The translations under genes and the position numbers were made by a program. This document shows, in pieces, positions 1 to 55,722 of a stretch of DNA of 64,000 bases. The notes beneath the pieces were generated by a model. That model did not search any database. It saw nothing but the letters and a program-made list of their open reading frames with translations, and was not told the DNA's origin. Source of the DNA: Laetmonice hystrix (lineage: Eukaryota); assembly GCA_965235115.1 (NCBI GenBank), contig OZ249450.1:15500001-15564000 (forward strand), in the 5' to 3' direction. Numbering within the stretch: position 1 is the stretch's first letter; each line of letters starts with the position of its first letter.

Positions 1-296
1 TATAAACTGCAGGCCATTTTTGGAGCAAAACTCTTAGAAAAAAAAGTTGGGTCTCAACCCTATGAAACATGCTGAAACGTTTATCACTATCAGTTAGATG
101 CTGCACCAGCTTGGTTATAGTTTGAAATGTTGCTGTCCATACGCCAGTATCACCATCATCTCCTATTGAAGACAATATGATACACCTTTGTTTCATTTAA
201 ACTTATGACGATGGATTGTGAAGCACTCTTTTGATTAATGCGTTTTCATGGAAATCTCAGAGATTTTTCACAACTTTTTTTAATCTGTTTGACTAG

Positions 297-490
297 ATAT
301 GCAGTCATTGCCAGTGGTTGTGCCAGCTGTCCCAAGTTGAAGTGTGAACGGCCTGGCTGTGACACCCACTTCTGTTACCACTGTAAGCAGCACTGGCATC
401 CAAACCAAACCTGTGACGCAGCACGGGCCGAACGTGCAGCGCACCTCCGGTCATCTTCCATCTCCTACAGCCACGAATCTAGCTCCCAGA
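297..490 (+). CDS. RNF19: RNF19-type RBR E3 ligase, internal exon (IBR domain C-terminal part)
   Basis: AG acceptor at 295-296 and GTAAGT donor at 491. Translation [43 protein letters not shown] closely matches the IBR region of RNF19A/B as I recall it. Confidence 0.95.
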
Positions 491-955
491 GTAAGTTGTA
501 AGACCGTTGTTTTCACGTTATAGGATTTGAAAGGTGCAATTGTATGAGTGCAGGGAAGGAAACTTGCTTTTTCTAGGAACAGTAACAATGGTTATTGCAA
601 AGTTGCATGTGTTTCTTGATTGGTTCTTGACTGAAGGCTTGTACCACAACCGCATTGCATTTGTCTTGATGGGAAGTCTTGACGTTTGTCAAGGCTATCT
701 GCACGTGTCCCCTTTGTAACATTTCTCTGGCAAGTCTGGGGTCAGTAAAAAGAATCCTAGACCCAGATTGGAATGTTATTTTCCATTTTAAAGATCTAAG
801 TGTACTGGCATTAGCTATTTAGTAACTTCAAAGTGTGTGGTGTAGGACAGAGTTTGATATCAAAATATTAATGATCCTGTGTTTTGATTTAATGACTTGG
901 GTCAGCATTTTATATGATAAGGAAATGATCAAATCATCATATTATCTTTTACCAG

Positions 956-1097
956 ATGAGATCAAGCCCTGCCCACGATGTGGGGCGTTTATTATCAAGA
1001 TGGACGACGGGTCATGTAATCACATGACGTGTGCAGTCTGTGGAGCCGAGTTCTGTTGGCTCTGTATGAAGGAAATATCTGACTTGCATTATCTGAG
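956..1097 (+). CDS. RNF19: RNF19 exon, RING2 (Rcat) domain
   Basis: accag acceptor and GTAAGT donor. [46 protein letters not shown] contains the RING2 catalytic CNHMTC motif. Phase fits both neighbours. Confidence 0.97.
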
Positions 1098-1342
1098 GTA
1101 AGTCAACTTATCTGACTTGCATAATCTGAGGTAAGTCAACTTACCACTGTGATTCATATCTTGACAGTTCAGAAATTATAATGCATCTTTGGACAGACAT
1201 AAAATATGCTTAATAAAAAAAAAATATAAAAAAAAGTTGGCATTTCTGTTAGGTGATTTTATTAATTTTAGGAGGAAAGATTGTGAGAAAATATACAAGA
1301 CGTACAAGAAGTACTAAATTATGTCTAACTGGTCTATTACAG

Positions 1343-1505
1343 CCCGTCTGGGTGCACATTCTGGGGCAAGAAGCCGTGGTCGCGGAAGAAGAAGATACTC
1401 TGGCAGTTAGGCACATTGGTTGGAGCACCTGTAGGTATCAGCCTCGTGGCTGGAATCGCTGTGCCTGCCATGATTATTGGCATACCTGTCTGGGTGGGTC
1501 GCAAG
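1343..1505 (+). CDS. RNF19: RNF19 exon, end of RING2 and first hydrophobic segment
   Basis: [54 protein letters not shown], bounded by tacag and GTAAGA. Confidence 0.96.
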
Positions 1506-1710
1506 GTAAGAATGTTAGAGATTCGTTTAGTCTATTATGTTACAAATACCAGACCTTATGACCAGGCATTGTATGACCTTCTTTGTGTGTGTTCCTGTGT
1601 ATTTTGTGTTTTCACTAATGTATCTCTTAGTTCCAGGGCCGTTAACTTGCACAAAGCAAAATCCAACCATTTGCACAACTGCTCATTGATATAACTTTCT
1701 TACTCAACAG

Positions 1711-32963: not shown

Positions 32964-33098
32964 NNNNNNNNNNNNNNNNNNNNNNNNNNNNNNNNNNNNN
33001 NNNNNNNNNNNNNNNNNNNNNNNNNNNNNNNNNNNNNNNNNNNNNNNNNNNNNNNNNNNNNNNNNNNNNNNNNNNNNNNNNNNNNNNNNNNNNNNNNN
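32964..33098. other. Assembly gap (135 N)
   Basis: Run of N, abutting a GA-rich repeat. Confidence 1.
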
Positions 33099-36301: not shown

Positions 36302-36487
36302 NNNNNNNNNNNNNNNNNNNNNNNNNNNNNNNNNNNNNNNNNNNNNNNNNNNNNNNNNNNNNNNNNNNNNNNNNNNNNNNNNNNNNNNNNNNNNNNNNNN
36401 NNNNNNNNNNNNNNNNNNNNNNNNNNNNNNNNNNNNNNNNNNNNNNNNNNNNNNNNNNNNNNNNNNNNNNNNNNNNNNNNNNNNNNN
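36302..36487. other. Assembly gap (186 N)
   Basis: Run of N. Confidence 1.
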
Positions 36488-39199: not shown

Positions 39200-40084
39200 A
39201 GAAAAAATTGGCACCGGATGGTACGGTTGTCAGTGCGCACCTGAGTCGGTGTGGTGGCGGCGATTCGGTCATCACCAAGCGTCTCTAGTGGTGTTTCGGC
39301 GCGCGCACGTGTACCGGGGACAGTGTGGACTCCTCCCAGTCGGAGAGGTAGACACCACCACCACCACCACCACCGCCACCACCACCACGTGCAGTGCAGG
39401 TGTGGTGCAGTGAGCGTTGTCAGAGGGACACGTAGACTGACTGACTCCGTGGACGGATCACTGTGACTGACGGAGGGTGGAAGGACGTCACTGGGACAGA
39501 CCCGTCGGCTCGCTGCATGCACGCGGCACCCACTGCTCGCTCGGGTACCGTCTGACCAACCGTCCGGTCCAAGTGTACAAGGATCCAGTCTCACTGTGAC
39601 GCTATGCGATCTATGCGCTGGCTCGGAGAACTGAGCGACGGCCGTGGACGTGTACGGAGAGCGAAACTTTACAACTTTGACACATGGCAATTGGTATAGA
39701 TATCTGACATACGGATCGCGTGCCACTGAGCTGTGGTTTGGGAAGATAGCGTCTGCCATATACTTCAGATGAATGGCGTTTCACAAATATACGGATAACG
39801 TGTATAATATTTTTATATATCTGCGATTTCTCCCGGGATTGTCATATTTCACAACCATGGGAAATGTTCATATCTCGATCACTAGACAAAGTGCAAAGTG
39901 ATCGCCGATTCCTTGCGTTACGCAAACTGAAGAAGATAACAGCGGTTGTGGATATACCGCTCCTGATTGCTCCCGTATTTCATGTTTGACCATCACACCC
40001 GCCTTGAAGAATTCCTAAAGGGTTGATCATTTTATTTCTTGCGACAAAGAGGAAAGTGCTCAAAGTATTTCATCGCCCCCCAAA
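39200..40084 (+). promoter_or_regulatory. CpG-rich putative promoter/5' UTR region of the GPCR gene, including a (CAC)n tract at ~39355-39389
   Basis: GC/CpG-rich block directly upstream of a signal-peptide-encoding exon. TSS not determinable. Confidence 0.45.
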
Positions 40085-40372
40085 ATGCGGAATACGATGT
40101 TGTGTGGCGGGTGGTTGATTGGGTGGAGTTGGCGATTGGTAGCCGTTGTGGTATTGTGGACGATGGTGACGGTCACCCAGCCGTCCTCAGGCTCAGCGCC
40201 CGCCAAGACCCGTCGAAAGGACATCTGGCTGCTCGGGCTGTTCCCGTTTAACGGCTCGTGGGCCGGGGGTCTGGGCCAGCTGCCCGCCGTACAGATGGGA
40301 CTAGCCGACGTGAATGCTGACCCGTACATTCTGCCGGACTATACCATCAGCCTCACGGTCAACAACACTGGG
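40085..40372 (+). CDS. First coding exon of a GABA-B receptor-like class C GPCR (signal peptide and start of the Venus flytrap/ANF-receptor domain)
   Basis: ATG at 40085 (second at 40097), hydrophobic leader, then IWLLGLFPFNGSWAGGLGQLPAVQMGLADVNADPYILPDYTISLTVNNTG. This aligns to GABBR1 [42 protein letters not shown]. The phase-0 GTAAGT donor at 40373 falls just before the expected conserved Cys. Subunit identity is uncertain, and receptor guanylyl cyclases share this fold. Confidence 0.85.
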
Positions 40373-43366
40373 GTAAGTAGACCAACTCATGACTTCCATA
40401 CATAAATCCTCAAAATCTCAGGCAGAGATAATAAAAAGTGTCAAAGATGTGAGTTAGAAGGATATTGCATAACCGATTTGTTGGCGGGAGTTAGGCGTGT
40501 TCCTGCAGGGAACACGCAGGGGGTGTGGTGGCCGGTTATCATCAGTCTGGGAGGTTTACATCTGCTATATGGCAACCACGCCAGCGAGTTGTTTTTCAGC
40601 CACTCAGATAGGGTACACGCGAACACTTAGCGCGCAAATACCACACCCGCAGGTTCCTGGGGGTGGCAGACAAGGTTACTACCACCGTCTGGGGTTCTCC
40701 AAGTACACGGGTGAAGGGGACACGAGGGCACCTCCAACGAACACCTGCAACCTTCACCTCTCTTCACGTGAGCCTCGCAGGCTATAACATTTGAAGTAGT
40801 GTATAGCGGCAGTATGTTGCCAACAACCAGTTATAGAAAACCACGTGTTGATAGCTCAAGCCATTGCCCAATAATTCCAGGCTTGTAGAATGTATAGCTT
40901 CTTTCCCGTGTATGTATGTGGTGTTGAATCTGGCGATAACAGCAAGTCAATGTATAGTTTTTTTTCGGATGGTAACATTTTTCCACATGCTCAGCATCTC
41001 TTCGGCTTCGGTTGGGTGTTTTAACAGGGCTGGTTCCAGCAGGTACATCTCCCGCGTCCGTCATGACGTAAACCATGACGTCACGTAGAGCTTATCCGGT
41101 TTACCAAGACGAGTGACGTACATTGAGCAAATACTTATGTTAATTCAGTCATGCGTTTATAGAAACTTCTACAGCTTCTCGTAGTCCTAGATCAGGAGCA
41201 AATTTTTAAAATGATTTATGGATCATGTCGTTGGGAAAGACAACATTGTGGGAAGTGTCATGCTTAAAGAACCTGATAAAAATAATGGTGGTTAAAGCAT
41301 GGTAAATCCATGATATGAGTGTATATGACCATGAGGCTGAGATCTCAATTTGTTGATCTGGTCAGAGGCCGTCGGTGACTGCATGGCGAGGTTTTATGGA
41401 GATGTAGTCCGACTGCGGTGTGTTTCACGCCGCCCTGGTCGAGAGGTAATAATTTATCCCTGATGGTCATACAGCTATTTCGGTGCCTCACGGTGTCAAT
41501 TCGGTCGGGGACAAGCATCGATCGATCAGTTGATTTATTCGGATAGAGGGATAGCCTGAAATAGATAAAGGGACCCCCCCCAACCTAAGGATAGGGATAG
41601 AGCGGCAGACAGATATCAACGAGAGCAATTGGAAGGCGGAAGCTAAGGGCACGGGACAAAAGTGGAAATTGACTTTCTATCATGGAGGATCGTGTTTCTG
41701 GTGGCAGCCAGCGGGACGGCCTGGTCAGGTTGGGGGTTTGTCCTCACGTGTCGGGTTGAGTAAAGGTGGTCGGCCCCGTCAAGGTTACGTCCACGTGGAC
41801 TACCCACTCCACATTCACTGACACTGGTCGCTTCCGTTTTCTCGCTCCCAGACTCTACCGTCGTCATAATGTATTTGCCAAATTGGTCCTGTTAGAATGC
41901 AAATCACTATGGATGAATGGTAAGAGAGCGCGGAGTGGTTCTTCTCATTGACAGAACCACCCAATCAAAGGTGACACCGAAATACGAGGCCAATATTCTA
42001 CATACTTCCTCAAATACGGGACACTTTTACAGGAGGTCTTGGTTACTGATGACAGCGCGTTTCGACATGATACGACTCGGCCAACTGGCACCTGGAATGA
42101 ATCAGAGTGCTGTTATAGCCAACTAATGAGGATGCCGGCGTCAGGTTCGAATTTCGATGACGACCTTAAAAATCAGAGACTGCGTTAGCTTTGATCTGTC
42201 CATTCCAGAGCAACGTCTGTGGAGTGGGCTGAATGATTCGTCCCGCCGCCATGTAGACGGAAACGGAGCAATGCGCAGGCCGCGTGCGCAGTCCGTCATA
42301 AACTACCGGCGACAAATGGAAGCCGTCGTATGATTTTTTCAGGAGGATGCTATCACTCACAGACATATAGAAAATACATCCATCGACTCTCCCGCGCGAC
42401 TTGCTGCACTCCGCGCCGTATTACCTACCATGCCAGGGTCCGCTTGGGGTCCCCGGCCTTCCTCCCCGTACTCTTTGATGTGTAATCTTCGAGACCCCAG
42501 CCTGTCAATCGTTCATACAAACCATTCCCAGCCACTTAGATATATACGAGTGTTGGCGGCCGGTGAGCATGAATTCAAGTGCGGTAAGCACATCCCATCT
42601 AGATTGTGAAGCGATATACGCAATACTTGGAGCGGCCGTCGGGTATAGAGTTGGGTGGGGATCGGTAGGTTGTATATACATGTAGGCCTAAAGCTCGCGG
42701 CTATAGCACAGAAATAACATTTACCTCAGCCACTCATTATGGTAAAGATCACAACACATAACACAGTATTTCTGGCGGCTGAGACCTCAAACTCCGCCTT
42801 ATTTGAGATTTACGGACATGAGTGGTAAAACAAAAGCCTACGGAAGTTTGGGATGGCTCCAGGCGAGAGACCCAAACGTGACAGTTGCTCTCTCCCACTC
42901 CTTCTGATTTTGACTAGAACGTTGTCTAAAGTCCACATGACAATTAGCCATGATCCATGATGTCATGAAAAAGCTGTAATTAGGATAACGCTCACATCAG
43001 ATGCGAGAAAAGTGATAGTAGTGTTATAATCAGCTGGCGCGCAAAGGGAGCTCAAAATAGGTTCCACAAAGTTTTCGTCTTCAAAGTTGTGATGAGGTTC
43101 CTAATTCATCTGAACTTTGGACCAGCTCTCCCCAGTTTGACATTGTCTCGGAGTTGGCGGGGGGGGGGGGGGGGGGTAGACCGTACCTCAGGGAGGATTT
43201 TTTTAAATCATGCCTTTGGGAATATCTGGAAGGGCTAAGATCAAGTACCCCAAGTCCCATCATATACACACATAGGCCTGCTATTTACAGTACATACCAC
43301 GTACATAGCAAACGATATAGGCGCTATATGTGACCAGACAACCGAACCCTTTCCCGGCTAACTATA

Positions 43367-45323
43367 TATCGGGTGGATAAAAAAAAACGCCCCGAACTTC
43401 AAACTTCAATATCTCAAAAAGTAATGATTGTAATTTAATGAAATTTTTTATAGTATAACTTCATGATGTTGTCTCTTAGTTATCAATGTTACAACTCAAT
43501 AGCTTGGATATTAATTCCGTGGCACTGAAAACAAAAATCAATGTCCAAAAGCGCAATGCCGGGCTAAAGCGTTTTATTGTCGCACATAGAGTCCCTGGCC
43601 TCACCTAGAGTAGGTGGTCAATCGGCCCCCCGTTTTCACCGCATACTGCTCTCAGTCTCTTCTTCCATGATCCAATACACTTCCTAATCTCTGATAGGGA
43701 AATATCTTCCCAACATTGGGCAATACGGTTTTTCAACTCTCGTTCAGTGAATTTCTCAATGCGACCACGATACACCTTCTCAACGAGAGAATTCCAGATG
43801 TGATAATCCATTGGATTACAGTCTGGTGACTGTGGAGGCCAGTCATCTTTCATAATAAACTCAGGCACAACTTCTGCAAGATGATCTTGTGTGACTTTAC
43901 TTGTATGGGATGTGGCCCCATCCTGCTGGAATATGTAATTGTCATCTGGGTACAGACGACGACAATCAGGAAGAAGTCCTTCATCCAAGAGTTTAATGTA
44001 ACGGGCAGAGTTAACCTTGGTTTTCTCAGTGTCTATGAAATGTATCCTTGTCTTTCCTCTCCATGAAACACCTGCGGAAACCATGACCTTTTTTGAAAAC
44101 CTTGAAGTCTCGTGATAAAGTCTGGAAACTGGAATGTCCTTTTTCCTTGTACCATAGACAACATCATTCTGTCTATTCCGGGCAATTTCCTGAGTAAAAT
44201 CCTTTTCATCAGTGAACATGATCCGTTCAACATCTTTCTTTGAATACCAGTCATTTAGTCGTTTGCAACGAGTTTTCCTCTTTTTCTGAACAGTTTTATC
44301 ACGCCGAGTCACTCTATTCCGTTTGAAAGCCTTGAGATGAAGTGCTTTAGTCATGTTCTGAATAGATCGACGACAAACTACCAGATCTTTAGCAATTTGC
44401 CGCTGTGATTTGTGCGTTCCCGGTTGTTCCTCCTGGGATGCTATCATTTCCCCGACATAGTCAATGTTCTGCTGCGTACAGGCAGTCCTAGGCCGACCAC
44501 TCCCCAGCTTTCTTGCAGTGGATCCTGTTGTTTCTAACCTTTTGATAATCTTATTAATCGAACTTCTGTTCCAGTTCTTTCCAGGGAATTCCTGTGCGAT
44601 CTTTGCTCCGCGCCATCCTTTCTCAACAAAACAAGTCTCAATCAAAGCCTTATCAGAACTACTGTAAACCATATTGAAAGCAGCTGTGTACAGACTGAAA
44701 TGAACAGTTTGTGGTCTTCCCGCACCATCTACAATGCATCCAGACTACATGACCCATTGACCCCATTTCTAAGACCACACTTGGCATGTGACACTTGATT
44801 GACAGGAGTGACGGAACGTTCTGAACGTGTTGCTAAACGTGATAATGATACGATTTCCCTTGAACTTCTGGTTACAGCAATATCGTCCTAATGTTGCAGT
44901 TTCTCTGTAGGGTTTGGCACATTAAACATCTGGTTTTCTCTAAAAGTACTATAAATATAAGGAATAGCACAAAATTTATTATATCTAGTGGTCCACAACA
45001 TTATAGGCCTACATATTGTAAAACATGCAAAACTAAATATTGATTTTTTTTTACCCAAGGTACAATGCGGTGCATTAAACAGGTGTGAAATTGGACACCT
45101 GACAGCTGCATGATATTTGACCTAATTCCGGCATTTCGTTTTTAGACACCGATTTTTGTTTTTAGCGCCACGGGATTAATATCAAAGCTATTGAGTTGAA
45201 ACTTTAACATACCAGAGATAATATCATGAAGTGATACGAAGAAAAATTTTATTGAATTACAGTGCATAGTTTTTGAAATATTGAAGTTTGAAGTTCGGGG
45301 CGTTTTTTTTTATCCACCCGATA
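43367..45323 (-). mobile_element. Full-length IS630-Tc1-mariner element, DD37D (maT) type
   Basis: TA TSD at 43365-43366 and 45324-45325. The outer 46 bp of the TIRs are a perfect inverted match (TATCGGGTGGATAAAAAAAAACGCCCCG...). Imperfect inversion continues to ~196 bp (43367-43562 vs 45128-45323). Confidence 0.96.
43605..44672 (-). CDS. DD37D transposase, intact 355 aa
   Basis: ATG to TAG uninterrupted. N-terminal HTH with GSGRPR; IMFTDEKDF, FQQDGATSH and WPPQSPDCNPMDY, with 37 residues between the 2nd and 3rd Asp. Minus-strand AATAAA at 43573-43578. Confidence 0.97.
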   Translation of the reverse strand: MVYSSSDKALIETCFVEKGWRGAKIAQEFPGKNWNRSSINKIIKRLETTGSTARKLGSGRPRTACTQQNIDYVGEMIASQEEQPGTHKSQRQIAKDLVVCRRSIQNMTKALHLKAFKRNRVTRRDKTVQKKRKTRCKRLNDWYSKKDVERIMFTDEKDFTQEIARNRQNDVVYGTRKKDIPVSRLYHETSRFSKKVMVSAGVSWRGKTRIHFIDTEKTKVNSARYIKLLDEGLLPDCRRLYPDDNYIFQQDGATSHTSKVTQDHLAEVVPEFIMKDDWPPQSPDCNPMDYHIWNSLVEKVYRGRIEKFTERELKNRIAQCWEDISLSEIRKCIGSWKKRLRAVCGENGGPIDHLL

Positions 45324-51900: not shown

Positions 51901-53194
51901 ATTTAATATGTTTTCAACAGATTGGTGTAGGTTCCACAATGCAGTTTGGATACAACCTTATACGTTGGCGATACAGTACTTTTGATCTACCGTATAGTCT
52001 GCTGGAAGTTTACGGCCTACTATATGAAGCAGCGGTGTCCATAACGCGAGCTTGTCTGAACGCTTGTCGGGCTTCCAGTTGGCTTCCTTTAGCACCTCAT
52101 AGATACAACTCACGATAGGACTCGGTTGGGTTGGGTGATGGTTGGGTAAAGTTATGTCCTTGGACAAGTTCCGCGAGGTACAGTTATAGGTAATGACGTA
52201 TTACTTGGAGCAGATGTTATTGGTTGATTTCGATCGCTGTCCGTGGCTCCTGAAGACGTTACACCACTGGAATGTCGTCTCTTGATTCTGTATATTACAA
52301 CTTACCGCCCATCATGACCCTTTCACAGTAGAAGCGATTGTATAGCGCCAATTGCTCTCGGATACGCCTGGTTGTTAGGGGAAACCAGTAAGGAGGTCAT
52401 TGGGTTGTCTGGAACTGATGGAGCGGAGGTCATGAAATGTGGGAGGCCAGCAGATGGCCTGGCCATGCTGGGTGATGTTGACAAGAGGCACACTCGTCAG
52501 ATATCATCACCGTATCAGTCACTGCCACCAATGGCACCTCTACCGACTGCCGTATCAGAGACAGCACCGGTTGGCCACCATCGCCGGCCGACCAAAGACC
52601 TGCCGCCGGCAGTGGCTACATGGTCACTGGCCTCCCCATGCTGAGGACTACCTCGCTCAAGTCGGCGGCCAATGCCGTATGCTGGTGACCAAAGGATAGA
52701 TTTAATATCTGCCACCATTGTGTAACAGGTAATTCTGATAATTGAAGGATTATCTAATTAGTTTGGTAAGAATTGTCTTCCCTAGCGGGTAATTTGATAA
52801 CACGTGTCGTTTTATGGCTGTACAATCGCTCTTATCTTTGTTATAGTCCCACATATGTAGGAAAACATATCTTAGATAGCCAGAAGAGGATCTTCACGTG
52901 CCAAGATCGGTTTAGGTCGCGTGATATAATGTCTGTATAATAATAAATGTTTATATGGGGCTCCTAGCTGCCTTCATGGGGTTGATGAGCAATCATACTG
53001 TATATAGCCACTTAGCGATGTTATCGGTTCTAACGTCAGACCGGCCTATAGATGTGACATATAGTTCACCCACGCCTCTAGATGTGAACCACGCGATAAC
53101 ACCTTACGCCCTAGACCCGGCCCAGGCCCGGCCCAGACCCGGCCCAGACCCAGGCCGAGCAGATCGGGGCGGAGCCCTGACGACAGCTTGATAA

Positions 53195-54479
53195 AGCCCC
53201 AGTCCCACCAAAGCCGAATTAGCTACGACGTGTCACGATCTGATAAATCGTGTAGAATCGGGAAAGGTCCTAACTCGGTCGTAGAGTAGTCTTGATAGAT
53301 CCTCATAGGTCGCGACAATTTTGAACTGTTCAAAACAATCGGCATTGGTCGGGAAAAAGTTCAGATCGGGGCTATATCGTAGGTCAAACGTTGCTCAGTC
53401 GGGAATATAGTCGGGGAACAATCTGGATAGTTCGTTTCTCGGTCCTGGTTTATCGTAGGACAATTGCCAGATAATTAAGCCCCAGTCCCACCAAAGCCGA
53501 TTGTACTACGTTCCATGCCGTTCTATCAAGATCTAAAATTTATTTTAAGTCGTGATGAATCGTGATGAAATAATGACAACCCGAAGACCTAGCTACGAAT
53601 TGTCACGTTCAACGGCGACTGGGCAACGGTTTTCCAAAGATCTCTCAACGATCACGCTGCGTGCTATCATGTTCTATCTCGACATCCCCCCGACCTTGCC
53701 GACCTATGCAGATTGAGCTACGTCCTATCAAGAACCCGACCCGATGTTTGACCAACGATATAGCAACGTTCTATGCCGTCTGAGCCCCAGCCGAGCTACG
53801 ACCTGTCCCGATGACGTCAGGGCTAGATCTAGGAAATGTCTGGCGATTGTCCTACGATCAACCAGGACTGAACAACGAACTATCCCGATTGTCCCACGAC
53901 TATTCCCGACTGAGCAACGTTTGACCTACGGTATATCCCCGATTTGAGCTTTTTCCCGACCAATGCCGATTGTTTTGAACAGTTTAAAATTGTCGGGGTG
54001 CAATCGTGGCCTATCCCGACCTATGAGGATCTATCAAGACTACTGTACGACCGAGTTAGGACCTTTCCCGATTCTACACGATTTATCAGATCGTGACACG
54101 TCGTAGCTAATTCGGCTTTGGTGGGACTGGGGCTTTGGCCCTGATCTAGACCTGATGTCATCGGGACAGGTCGTAGCTCGGCTGGGGCACGGCATAGAAC
54201 GTTGCTACATCGTTTGTCAATCTTGGTATAGGTCGCTATACATCGGGCCGGGATCTTGATAGGTCGAAGCTCAATCTGCATAGGTCGGCAGTGAACGTTG
54301 CTTTAGTCGTTGCGCTGTCGGGAAGGTCGGGCCGATGTCGGGATAGAACGTGATAGATTCGTAGCTAGGTCTTCGGGTTTTCACGATTTCATCACGATTC
54401 ATCACGACTTAAACTAAATTTCAGATCTTGATAGAACGGCATAGAACGTCGTACAATCGGCTTTGGTGGGACTGGGGCT
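53195..54479. mobile_element. Harbinger/PIF-like MITE (outer copy, ~625 bp when the insert is removed)
   Basis: TAA|AGCCCCAGTCCCACCAAAGCCGA ... TCGGCTTTGGTGGGACTGGGGCT|TAA: 3-bp TAA TSD and 23-bp TIRs. Confidence 0.9.
53478..54134. mobile_element. Same-family MITE inserted in opposite orientation inside the outer copy (657 bp)
   Basis: Same 23-bp TIRs at 53478 and ending at 54134, flanked by TTA/TTG. Its halves are reverse complements of the outer copy's halves. Confidence 0.88.
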
Positions 54480-54580
54480 TAACCTCGGTTAGAATGGCAG
54501 CTCGCCGAAGTTGGCATTACTGAAAGAACAATGATAACGGTCCATCGAGTCAAGCCGAGCCGAGCGTGCCCATCCCGGAT

Positions 54581-54979
54581 GACTCGCTGAGTTTTACCGA
54601 GTTAGCGGGTGACCTTGAGAGAGCCCGGAGGACTCGCTGAGTTTTACCGAGTTAGCGGGTGACCTTGAGAGAGCCCGGAGCACTCGCTGAGTTTTACCGA
54701 GTTAGCGGGTGACCTTGAGAGAGCCCGGAGGACTCGCTGAGTTTTACCGAGTTAGCGGATGACCTTGAGAGAGCCCGGAGGACTCGCTGAGTTTTACCGA
54801 GTTAGCGGGTGACCTTGGGAGAGCCCGGAGCACTCGCTGAGTTTTACCGAATTAGCGGATGACCTTGGGAGAGCCCGGAGCACTCGCTGAGTTTTACCGA
54901 GTTAGCGGGTGACCTTGGGAGAGCCCGGAGGACTCGCTGAGTTTTTACCGAGTTAGCGGATGACCTTGAGAGAGCCCGG
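54581..54979. repeat. Minisatellite, 50-bp unit x8
   Basis: GACTCGCTGAGTTTTACCGAGTTAGCGGGTGACCTTGAGAGAGCCCGGAG with exact 50-bp period from 54581 to 54931. Confidence 0.97.
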
Positions 54980-55722
54980 CGTTGTCCTATTAATATGGCG
55001 ACGTCACTGAGAGGTTTTCTTTATACTGACGCCTTTTGATAATATCGGCTTGCCATGCCGCGGCACGGACCACGGACTGATCTTCATGGAAATCTAAAGA
55101 AAGGTTTTTACACTAGACTGGCGCAAGAAGTTGTGATCACACACATCTTGTCCAATTCCTTGGCCGGGAAATGTCAGTGTTGTCTCTGTGTCTCCTCGCT
55201 CGTGGCGTCACGCTAATAATAACAACCGTTCAGACCAAAAAGTTAAAAAAAAAGGCTAAATGAATATCAGTCGCTCTGTAACGACCTGGACAGTGCAAAA
55301 AACAGTGTTGGACACCTCAGGTTTGAGCTGTGCTGCTGGTTGAAACGTTCTACTTGCGCATACTCAGCACCAATTGTGACATTCTCTGTCGTTTTAGTGG
55401 GCTCATGTTTAAAGGTTGGATGTCGAACTTAGAGTCTGTGGATGAAGACATGGAGACATTGCCCTCATTCTAGAATAAAGAACATGAGGCACATTAAAGC
55501 CATTATTGCCGAAAAAAGAACATTAACCTCTTTTCCCCTGGACAACTTTCCCTTTTTCTACTGGAAGAAATAACTGTAAATCGAAGTGAATCGGGTAAAT
55601 CAACACTTTGGTTCCGAATTGGCCACTTAAACTTTGAGGGTGTGATTGTAGTACAGTAAAGTGGCGATGGAGCGCAAGGCGGGAACACATTTCTCCCTGC
55701 AGCTTCCTGCCCCCCACCCTAC

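What the first reader, a model, noticed from the sequence alone, without database searches (positions are those of the whole stretch)
53195..54479. MITE inserted head-to-head into its own family, giving interlocked inverted repeats (A-B-A'-B')
Seen: four copies of one 23-bp TIR (two forward at 53195 and 53478, two reverse ending at 54134 and 54479). The outer pair has a TAA TSD and the inner pair has TTA/TTG. Removing the inner copy restores a sequence colinear with its reverse complement. The copies differ by substitutions and indels, so they are siblings rather than an assembly echo. A pairs with A' (~280 bp) and B with B' (~350 bp) in a crossed, pseudoknot-like topology. Inference: in the GPCR pre-mRNA this could form alternative long dsRNA stems (ADAR or endo-siRNA substrate). 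Four TIRs also allow hybrid excision units (A-B-A' or B-A'-B').
Basis: partly seen in the sequence, partly recalled or inferred. Interest (0 to 1): 0.7.

Follow-up and report, generated by a model that had tools for sequence, protein, structure and literature searches.

The report
Amplified double MITE, one heterozygous copy
The four-repeat structure is real, but it is not a local accident: it is one recent, heterozygous copy of a roughly 180-copy family of "double" mini-transposons. The family arose once, when a small element landed reversed inside a sibling, and has moved as one 1.3-kb unit ever since.

Summary
Observation confirmed. Window 53195-54479 carries four copies of one 23-nt TIR in the order A-B-A'-B'. 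The outer flanks are TAA/TAA and the inner flanks TTA/TTG.

Interpretation only partly right.
- At least 43 full-length copies at 93-99% identity turned up in one genome search.
- There are 188 composite-specific junctions and 710 TIR hits genome-wide.
- There are 0 sites of the "outer element without its insert" type.

All outer halves form one clade and all inner halves another, and the subfamilies match between the two. So one ancestral reversed self-insertion with a TTA duplication was inherited as a block.

Read-derived contigs from the sequenced sample also hold an empty allele. It skips exactly 1288 bp (1285 + one TAA). The unit therefore went in, or came out, in one step with a 3-bp duplication, and it is heterozygous.

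Outer TIRs are almost invariant. Inner TIRs decay, and one subfamily has lost an inner TIR yet still spread.

The element is most likely a non-autonomous PIF/Harbinger (Tourist-type) element. Its transposase partner was not identified. The dsRNA/ADAR idea could not be tested because no RNA runs exist.

Unexplained: half of the copies have non-matching TAA/TTA flanks.

The scan noted a similar single self-nested MITE elsewhere in this genome (s1-351872).

The parts
53192..53194 (.). Left copy of the 3-bp target-site duplication (TAA) of the whole composite
   Evidence: The empty allele in read-derived contigs joins 53191 to 54480, skips 1288 bp, and 3 letters fit either side.
53195..53474 (+). 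Arm A: the left part of the outer element, with the outer-left TIR at 53195-53217
   Evidence: The outer-left TIR has 0 mismatches over 38 copies.
53475..53477 (.). Left copy (TTA) of the duplication made by the ancestral nesting event
   Evidence: TTA in nearly all copies. The old solo L035 has AAAATT, then 11 bp, then AGCCC at this site, which fits a single TTA before the insertion.
53478..54134 (-). Inner element (arms B + A'): a complete 657-bp sibling in reverse orientation, with TIRs at 53478-53500 and 54112-54134
   Evidence: All inner halves form one clade. Inner TIRs carry 32 mismatches over 38 copies, against 3 for the outer TIRs.
54135..54137 (.). Right copy of the nesting duplication, mutated here to TTG
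   Evidence: TTG only in L001, L002 and L003 (the 1285-bp subfamily), TTA in most others. Family contigs read A at 54137.
54138..54479 (+). Arm B': the right part of the outer element, with the outer-right TIR at 54457-54479
54480..54482 (.). Right copy of the 3-bp target-site duplication (TAA) of the composite

Best explanation
Window 53195-54479 is one young copy of a non-coding composite transposon, a 'double MITE'. It is heterozygous in the sequenced sample. The family has roughly 180 copies of 1.27-1.32 kb.

The founder arose once. A MITE of about 0.7 kb inserted in reverse orientation, with a TTA duplication, into a diverged sibling. That automatically gives the A-B-A'-B' order.

Since then the block has been cut and pasted as a single unit through its two outermost TIRs. 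It lands on T-W-A triplets and duplicates 3 bp, which is the signature of PIF/Harbinger (Tourist-type) elements. The two inner TIRs are passengers that decay.

Shown: the family-wide layout, the single origin, one-step presence/absence at this locus with a 3-bp duplication, conservation of outer against inner TIRs, and the lack of coding capacity.

Inferred: that a PIF/Harbinger transposase, of which the genome has many intact copies, is the mobilising enzyme.
For: -: at least 43 full-length matches (query 1-1285) at 93-99% identity on many chromosomes.
- every one of 30 best loci, and nearly every TIR cluster on C1:1-59 Mb, has the same four-part order.
- 710 TIR hits, 0 in the control.
- composite junction 188; inner-type uninterrupted mid-site 171; outer-type uninterrupted site 0.
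- all copies share the indels that tell outer from inner. The outer lacks 21, 58 and 4 bp. The inner lacks 20 bp.
- the 38 outer halves form one clade (support 0.987) and the 38 inner halves form another. Subfamily groupings are mirrored between the two.
- mean pairwise identity of copies is 98.1% and mean nearest-neighbour identity is 99.1%. Outer against inner is 92.3%.
- in three runs of the sample, a contig joins 53191 to 54480. It skips 1288 bp and 3 letters fit both sides. Its depth is 41/18/36 against 67/43/55 for the shared flank, and it carries its own SNPs.
- all 49 non-redundant copies are flanked by T-W-A on both sides, with 3 exceptions at one end. Outer TIR mismatches are 0 and 3, against 23 and 9 for the inner TIRs.
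- the subfamily of about 1268 bp has one inner TIR destroyed yet has many copies.
- no ORF of 110 aa or more lies in the element.
- at least 151 DDE_Tnp_4 (PF13359) hits, many with intact frames of about 470 aa.
Against: - No autonomous element with these TIRs was found. On C1:1-59 Mb, none of 16 PF13359 hits lies nearer than about 37 kb to a TIR hit. Two loci with widely spaced TIRs hold no long ORF.
- Half of the copies have non-matching flanks (TAA on one side, TTA on the other). A plain copied 3-bp duplication does not predict this.
- The empty allele rests on short de Bruijn contigs with 27+3 letters on the left side, from one sample only. It could equally be a precise excision product.
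Only 49 of about 188 copies were read in full.
Confidence: 0.9

Rival explanations
1. One reading: at this locus a MITE inserted first, and a sibling later inserted into it head-to-head, giving a one-off interlocked structure.
For: The inner element has its own TIRs and T-W-A-like flanks (TTA/TTG). Outer and inner differ by 8% plus indels.
Against: The same junctions and the same outer/inner indels recur in about 188 copies. Outer and inner halves form two separate clades with mirrored subfamilies. There are no outer-only elements anywhere. The empty allele lacks the whole unit at once.
Confidence: 0.02
2. The 1.3-kb unit spreads mainly by recombination or replication processes, such as segmental or tandem duplication and satellite-like expansion, and not by transposition through its outer TIRs.
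For: Some copies stand in tandem with exactly 3-bp spacers (C1:30614924-30618880 with three copies; C8:12024791/12026114). Others stand head-to-head. Tandem MITE arrays were ascribed to slippage in corals (PMC2872659).
Against: Dispersed copies have unrelated flanks that begin exactly at the outer TIRs with T-W-A. This locus shows a precise presence/absence with a 3-bp duplication. Outer TIRs are kept while inner ones decay. Members of the C1 array are not always each other's closest relatives. That fits repeated insertion into the flanking TWA that each insertion re-creates.
Confidence: 0.04
3. Assembly artefact: a collapsed or mis-joined repeat produces the interlocked pattern.
For: None specific. 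The element is a high-copy repeat and no read-derived contig spans it whole.
Against: The same layout occurs in at least 49 independently flanked copies with copy-specific substitutions. Short-read contigs from the sample cover all internal junctions of the family.
Confidence: 0.01
4. The unit is kept because its RNA hairpin has a host function, for example as a source of small RNAs or as an editing substrate in the host gene's pre-mRNA.
For: The predicted fold is extreme: -702 kcal/mol, with a near-perfect A:A' duplex of about 280 bp, and an alternative B:B' state at -599 kcal/mol. The copy probably lies in a long intron of a class-C GPCR-like gene.
Against: The insertion is heterozygous and the family is young and dispersed, which is the pattern of a selfish element. 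There is no Rfam match and no RNA data. Any hairpin-forming repeat would give such a fold.
Confidence: 0.05

Closest known systems
Maize 'double Ds' (one Ds inserted in reverse orientation inside an identical Ds; hAT superfamily). From my own knowledge; the analogy is also used in scan note s1-351872.
   Same: One copy of a non-autonomous element sits reversed inside a sibling, flanked by its own target duplication. This gives four TIRs in the order > > < < and interlocked inverted repeats.
   Different: Double Ds is a hAT element with 8-bp duplications. It is present in few copies and is known for chromosome breakage through aberrant use of its end pairs. Here the flanks are 3-bp TWA, and the doubled unit is itself the successful amplifier with about 180 young copies. 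Use of inner or hybrid end pairs is not detectable.
Nested MITE multimers and self-insertions in rice and maize (Jiang and Wessler 2001, as summarised in PMC5172404)
   Same: Tourist/Stowaway MITEs often land in other MITEs, including their own family, at their preferred short target.
   Different: Those multimers are reported to arise from independent insertion events. Here a single nesting event became the founder of a family that transposes as a unit.
CMITE-IN of Acropora corals (PMC2872659)
   Same: A new mobile element family of about 70 copies was created when a MITE inserted into another short sequence. A presence/absence allele pair was seen. Tandem arrays of whole MITEs occur in the same genomes.
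   Different: CMITE-IN is a piggyBac-type element (TTAA) inside a non-MITE proto-element with direct repeats. It is not a reversed self-insertion and has no interlocked inverted repeats.
mPing / Tourist-type MITEs of the PIF/Harbinger superfamily (PMC2836001; PMC4561436)
   Same: Non-coding, TIR-bounded, with TAA/TTA targets, 3-bp duplications and precise presence/absence.
   Different: The size is 1.3 kb against 430 bp, and the architecture is doubled. No partner transposase has been linked. About half of the natural copies have non-matching TAA/TTA flanks.

Membership tests
Tourist-type MITE (non-autonomous PIF/Harbinger) | 3-bp target-site duplication on a T-W-A target | tested here: met
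   The empty allele skips 1285+3 bp and keeps a single TAA. T-W-A lies at both ends of 46 of 49 copies. Caveat: the middle base differs between the two sides in about half of the copies.
Tourist-type MITE (non-autonomous PIF/Harbinger) | Terminal inverted repeats | tested here: met
   The 23-nt TIR is exact at both outer ends. It shows 0 and 3 mismatches over 38 copies.
Tourist-type MITE (non-autonomous PIF/Harbinger) | No coding capacity | tested here: met
   No ORF of 110 aa or more lies in 53195-54479. The only stop-to-stop frame of 55 aa or more with a hydrophobic stretch near it ends at 53188, outside the element. Other frames shorter than 110 aa were not examined.
Tourist-type MITE (non-autonomous PIF/Harbinger) | Miniature size (below about 800 bp) | tested here: not met
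   The mobile unit is 1243-1396 bp. Only its two constituent halves, at about 625 and 657-690 bp, are MITE-sized.
Tourist-type MITE (non-autonomous PIF/Harbinger) | A PIF/Harbinger autonomous element with matching ends in the same genome | tested here: inconclusive
   The genome has at least 151 PF13359 hits, many intact. None of 16 hits on C1:1-59 Mb lies within about 37 kb of a TIR hit.
Double-Ds-type composite (reversed self-nested element) | A complete copy in reverse orientation inside a sibling, flanked by its own target duplication | tested here: met
   The inner element 53478-54134 has both TIRs. Its flanks are TTA/TTA in most copies.
Double-Ds-type composite (reversed self-nested element) | hAT superfamily (8-bp duplications, Ac-type ends) | tested here: not met
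   The duplication is 3-bp TWA.
Double-Ds-type composite (reversed self-nested element) | Aberrant transposition and chromosome breakage from alternative end pairs | not testable with these tools
   Indirect evidence only: 0 outer-only sites and one ambiguous three-TIR unit.
Foldback element | Two long inverted arms making up most of the element, in the order arm-loop-arm' | tested here: not met
   The order is A-B-A'-B'. The solo relative L035 is not a foldback.

The most novel reading that the evidence does not exclude
Two linked readings are not excluded.

(1) The doubled architecture is itself why this lineage out-competed its single-unit ancestors. Each outer end is backed by a second TIR in the same orientation and by a second set of subterminal 19-21-nt motifs.

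(2) The uncorrelated TAA/TTA flanks are a natural footprint of piggyBac-like 'seamless' chemistry in PIF/Harbinger elements. On this reading the excised element carries 3-nt overhangs from the donor's duplication. After replication, each new insertion then keeps one target-derived triplet and one donor-derived triplet.
Probability: 0.2. Interest if true: 0.6.

Novelty: new variant of a known kind. Interest (0 to 1): 0.38.

Why it matters
Nested and self-nested MITEs are known. They are usually dead-end, one-off structures, and in the hAT 'double Ds' case they break chromosomes. Here a reversed self-nested pair became the only recently active form of its family and is still polymorphic.

The four identical ends offer four possible pairings, but only the outermost pair is detectably used. 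That makes this a natural experiment on how a PIF/Harbinger-type transposase chooses its ends.

The non-matching flanks, if confirmed genome-wide with empty sites, would bear on the proposed staggered cleavage inside the target duplications (PMC4561436).

For annotation the practical point is to model this family as one 1.3-kb unit. It should not be modelled as two nested MITEs.

Tried and rejected
I did not try to obtain more letters by another tool. Two loci with TIRs 2-6 kb apart (L040, L047) are mosaics of fragments and hold no ORF above 199 aa.
- RNA, editing and small RNAs: only four runs of one sample hold this DNA, none of them RNA.
- Rfam: no match at E up to 0.1.
- GPCR context: the first ten long ORFs gave no receptor domain. 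A weak ANF_receptor start was found at 40019-40402. 7tm_3 exon hits lie 74-79 kb beyond the window on the same strand. This is suggestive only.
- Hybrid units: L045:1556-2499 looks like A-B-A' with TTA/TAA flanks. However, L045 and L052 share a similar complex arrangement inside another palindromic repeat. I do not count it as proof.
- Alternative end definitions were considered to explain the non-matching flanks: a 2-bp TA duplication, a 4-bp TTAA duplication, a 1-bp duplication, and a TWA|TWA target with no duplication. I rejected them against the flank table and the 1288-bp skip with 3 shared letters.
- L050 was first treated as a solo. It is in fact an old, 81-91% identical composite that carries the composite junction.
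- Jiang and Wessler 2001 is not held in the library and is cited only through PMC5172404.
- The N runs at 32964-33098 and 36302-36487 were left untouched.

Full report
**1. Observation**

The stretch was read directly and scanned for repeats. The 23-nt terminal inverted repeat AGCCCCAGTCCCACCAAAGCCGA stands forward at 53195 and 53478, and reversed ending at 54134 and 54479. All four copies are exact.

- The outer pair is flanked by TAA/TAA (53192-53194 and 54480-54482).
- The inner pair is flanked by TTA/TTG (53475-53477 and 54135-54137).
- Arm A (53193-53476) is complementary to A' (53834-54136) in blocks of 98, 95 and 86%.
- Arm B (53475-53829) is complementary to B' (54143-54482) in blocks of 84-96%.

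When 53478-54137 is cut out, the remaining outer element aligns end to end with the reverse complement of the inner one. That alignment has 550 matches, 46 mismatches and 90 gap columns, or 92.3% identity over aligned bases.

The A-B-A'-B' order needs no special explanation. Any element inserted in reverse into a sibling produces it, wherever it lands. The description is therefore correct.

**2. The layout belongs to the family, not to the locus**

A search of the window's own 627-Mb assembly with the whole 1285 bp returned at least 43 matches that cover the query from base 1 to 1285. They are 93-99% identical and lie on many chromosomes.

- In all 30 loci fetched, the four TIRs stand in the same order and spacing.
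- I also fetched every TIR cluster listed on chromosome piece C1 between 0 and 59 Mb as an unselected sample. Nearly all are the same four-part unit. One locus (L035, about 80% identical) is an old single element.
- The TIR occurs 710 times at up to 1 mismatch, against 0 for the reversed-pattern control.
- The composite-specific junction (inner TIR + TTA + start of B') occurs 188 times.
- The uninterrupted mid-site of the inner type occurs 171 times.
- The uninterrupted mid-site of the outer type occurs 0 times at up to 3 mismatches. This site would mark a solo outer element or a precise excision of the insert.

So essentially every recent member of the family is the double unit.

**3. One ancestral nesting event**

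All copies share the indels that tell outer from inner. The outer element lacks 21, 58 and 4 bp that the inner element and the old relatives have. The inner element lacks 20 bp that the outer element and the old relatives have.

In a maximum-likelihood tree of the halves, the 38 outer halves form one clade (support 0.987). The 38 inner halves form another clade, next to the inner part of an old composite (L050). The same subfamilies appear in both clades.

The old solo L035 reads AAAATT, then 11 bp, then AGCCC where the composite reads AAAATTA-[insert]-TTAGCCC. This fits a single TTA before the insertion and a 3-bp duplication.

L050 is 81-91% identical and already carries the composite junction. 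The nesting is therefore much older than the present burst.

The copies are young. Mean pairwise identity is 98.1% and mean nearest-neighbour identity is 99.1%. The window copy is 99.1% identical to L002 and to L003.

Length classes of 1317, 1307 and 1285 bp differ by deletions in the inner element. The window copy belongs to the shortest of these three classes. Its TTG flank is a point change shared only with L002 and L003.

**4. It moves as one unit**

Only four public runs hold this DNA, all from one sample and kept as contigs. I laid them on 52300-55300 (3001 letters, within the operators' limit).

Three of the runs contain a contig that joins 53191 directly to 54480. It skips 1288 bp, with 3 letters that fit either side. 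Its depth is 41/18/36, against 67/43/55 for the shared left flank, and it has its own SNPs downstream.

The 27+3 letters on the left side are what a bubble in a 31-mer graph gives. I read this as the second haplotype, which lacks the element and carries a single TAA.

The whole 1285-bp unit is therefore present on one haplotype and absent from the other, with a 3-bp duplication. It was either inserted in one step or precisely excised in one step. There is no intermediate with only the outer element.

Dispersed copies have unrelated flanks that begin exactly at the outer TIRs.

**5. Which ends are used**

Over 38 copies the outer TIRs carry 0 and 3 mismatches, while the inner TIRs carry 23 and 9. 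Two of the inner changes are shared by whole subfamilies, so they were propagated.

A subfamily of about 1268 bp has one inner TIR destroyed (...ACTTTTTTT) and is still common on C1. The inner ends are therefore dispensable passengers.

Products of the other three possible end pairings are not seen in numbers:

- There are no outer-only sites.
- There is no excess of inner-type elements.
- There is one ambiguous three-TIR unit in a complex locus.
- One 290-bp internal-deletion derivative keeps both outer ends (L021:3448-3737).

Why the inner pair is not used is open. It has one end of each subterminal type and often has perfect TIRs.

**6. What kind of element**

The element has no ORF of 110 aa or more and no Rfam match. 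It has a 23-nt TIR, T-W-A targets and a 3-bp duplication. It also has repeated 19-21-nt subterminal motifs (families D3 and D4).

By established knowledge of transposon superfamilies, this is the signature of non-autonomous PIF/Harbinger elements, the Tourist-type MITEs. At 1.3 kb the unit itself is above MITE size.

The genome holds at least 151 DDE_Tnp_4 hits, many with intact frames of about 470 aa. I could not link one of them to these ends:

- On C1:1-59 Mb no transposase hit lies within about 37 kb of a TIR hit.
- L040 and L047 hold no long ORF.

The superfamily assignment is therefore an inference from target and ends.

**7. An unexplained detail**

Among 49 non-redundant full copies, 40 do not abut another copy. 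Their flanks are TAA/TTA in 15, TAA/TAA in 12, TTA/TTA in 6 and TTA/TAA in 4. The middle base on the left is independent of the one on the right (Fisher p = 1.0).

This holds even for 99%-identical copies: L002 has TTA/TAA and L003 has TAA/TTA. A simple copied triplet cannot give this pattern. Yet this locus shows a true 3-bp duplication.

A possible account builds on the proposal that mPing is cut by staggered cleavage inside its duplications (PMC4561436):

- The excised element carries 3-nt overhangs from the donor's triplets.
- These overhangs pair with the target's T-W-A.
- A middle-base mismatch segregates at replication.
- Each insertion then keeps one target-derived and one donor-derived triplet.

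This is inference and was not tested.

**8.

As RNA, the plus strand folds at -702 kcal/mol. The fold uses a near-continuous A:A' duplex, and B' folds on itself. With A forced single-stranded, the best fold uses B:B' at -599 kcal/mol. The two long stems are real alternatives, and A:A' is strongly favoured.

Whether the region is transcribed is unknown, because there are no RNA runs.

- A plus-strand ORF at 40019-40402 has a signal-peptide-like start and a weak ANF_receptor match (E 0.029, below the cut-off).
- 7tm_3 exon hits lie on the same strand, 74-79 kb beyond the window end.
- An intron of a class-C GPCR-like gene is therefore plausible but unproven.

An earlier scan note calls the host a polychaete worm. 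I did not check this.

**9. Comparison with what is known**

- The structure matches maize double Ds in topology, but not in superfamily, copy number or behaviour (my own knowledge).
- Rice and maize MITE multimers are reported to come from independent insertions (PMC5172404).
- The coral CMITE-IN family shows that a MITE insertion can found a new mobile family and that whole MITEs can form tandem arrays (PMC2872659). That case is piggyBac-type and is not a reversed self-insertion.
- I found no report of a reversed self-nested MITE pair that became the dominant amplifying unit. My literature searches were limited.

**10. Verdict**

The origin by reversed self-insertion is right but ancestral. 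The locus-level story, the hybrid units and the dsRNA function are not supported or not testable.

This is an ordinary class of thing, a non-autonomous DNA transposon, in an unusual and well-documented form: a new variant of a known kind. Interest is moderate.

Noticed in passing
L001-L053 (copies of the family); window 53192-53194 and 54480-54482: The two T-W-A flanks of a copy often differ in the middle base: TAA/TTA 15, TAA/TAA 12, TTA/TTA 6, TTA/TAA 4 among 40 copies that do not abut another copy. The left and right middle bases are statistically independent. This locus nevertheless shows a true 3-bp duplication.
   Followed up: partly
G000:C1:30614924-30618880 (L020, L021, L029); G000:C8:12024791-12027381 (L019); G000:C8:24969901-24972526 (L028): Whole 1.3-kb units stand in tandem or head-to-head, separated by exactly 3 bp (TAA). 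This would result from insertion into the flanking triplet of an earlier copy. Array members are not always each other's closest relatives.
   Followed up: partly
G000:C12:27558645-27930799; G000:C1:26032355-26074789; G000:C11:22361676-22374231: PIF/Harbinger transposase (DDE_Tnp_4) hits with identical scores recur at regular spacing. There are about 25 hits every ~13 kb on C12, 7 every ~7 kb on C1, and 3 every 6038 bp on C11. Transposase genes thus sit inside long tandem arrays.
   Followed up: no
window 54574-54979: A minisatellite of 8.1 copies of a 50-bp unit at 95% identity starts 95 bp downstream of the element. The other haplotype differs in it.
   Followed up: no
window 53108-53156: A short GC-rich 11-bp tandem repeat (GCCCAGACCCG, 4.3 copies) lies just upstream of the insertion site.
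   Followed up: no
window 40019-40402 (+); G000:C20:15638287-15643158 (+): A likely first coding exon (signal peptide plus a weak ANF_receptor start) lies in the window. 7tm_3 exon hits lie about 100 kb downstream on the same strand. Together they suggest a very long class-C GPCR-like gene whose first intron holds several transposons.
   Followed up: partly
window 235-1691 (+): Exons of an RBR-type E3 ligase: an IBR domain at E 1e-10 in 826-1098, followed by a hydrophobic C-terminal exon.
   Followed up: no
window 43605-44672 (-): A 355-aa intact ORF with a weak DDE_3 match (E 2.9e-5, below the cut-off). It belongs to the Tc1/mariner-like element noted by the scan as s1-337740.
   Followed up: no
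L045:1480-3880: Two family units sit inside another palindromic repeat. The left flank is the reverse complement of the right flank (...CCCCAGTGGGACC TAA / TTA GGTCCCACTGGGG...). The first unit lacks arm B' and is bounded by an inner TIR.
   Followed up: partly
L014:2795-2975: The outer end of one copy carries three tandem repeats of a 79-bp terminal segment, each including the TIR.
   Followed up: no
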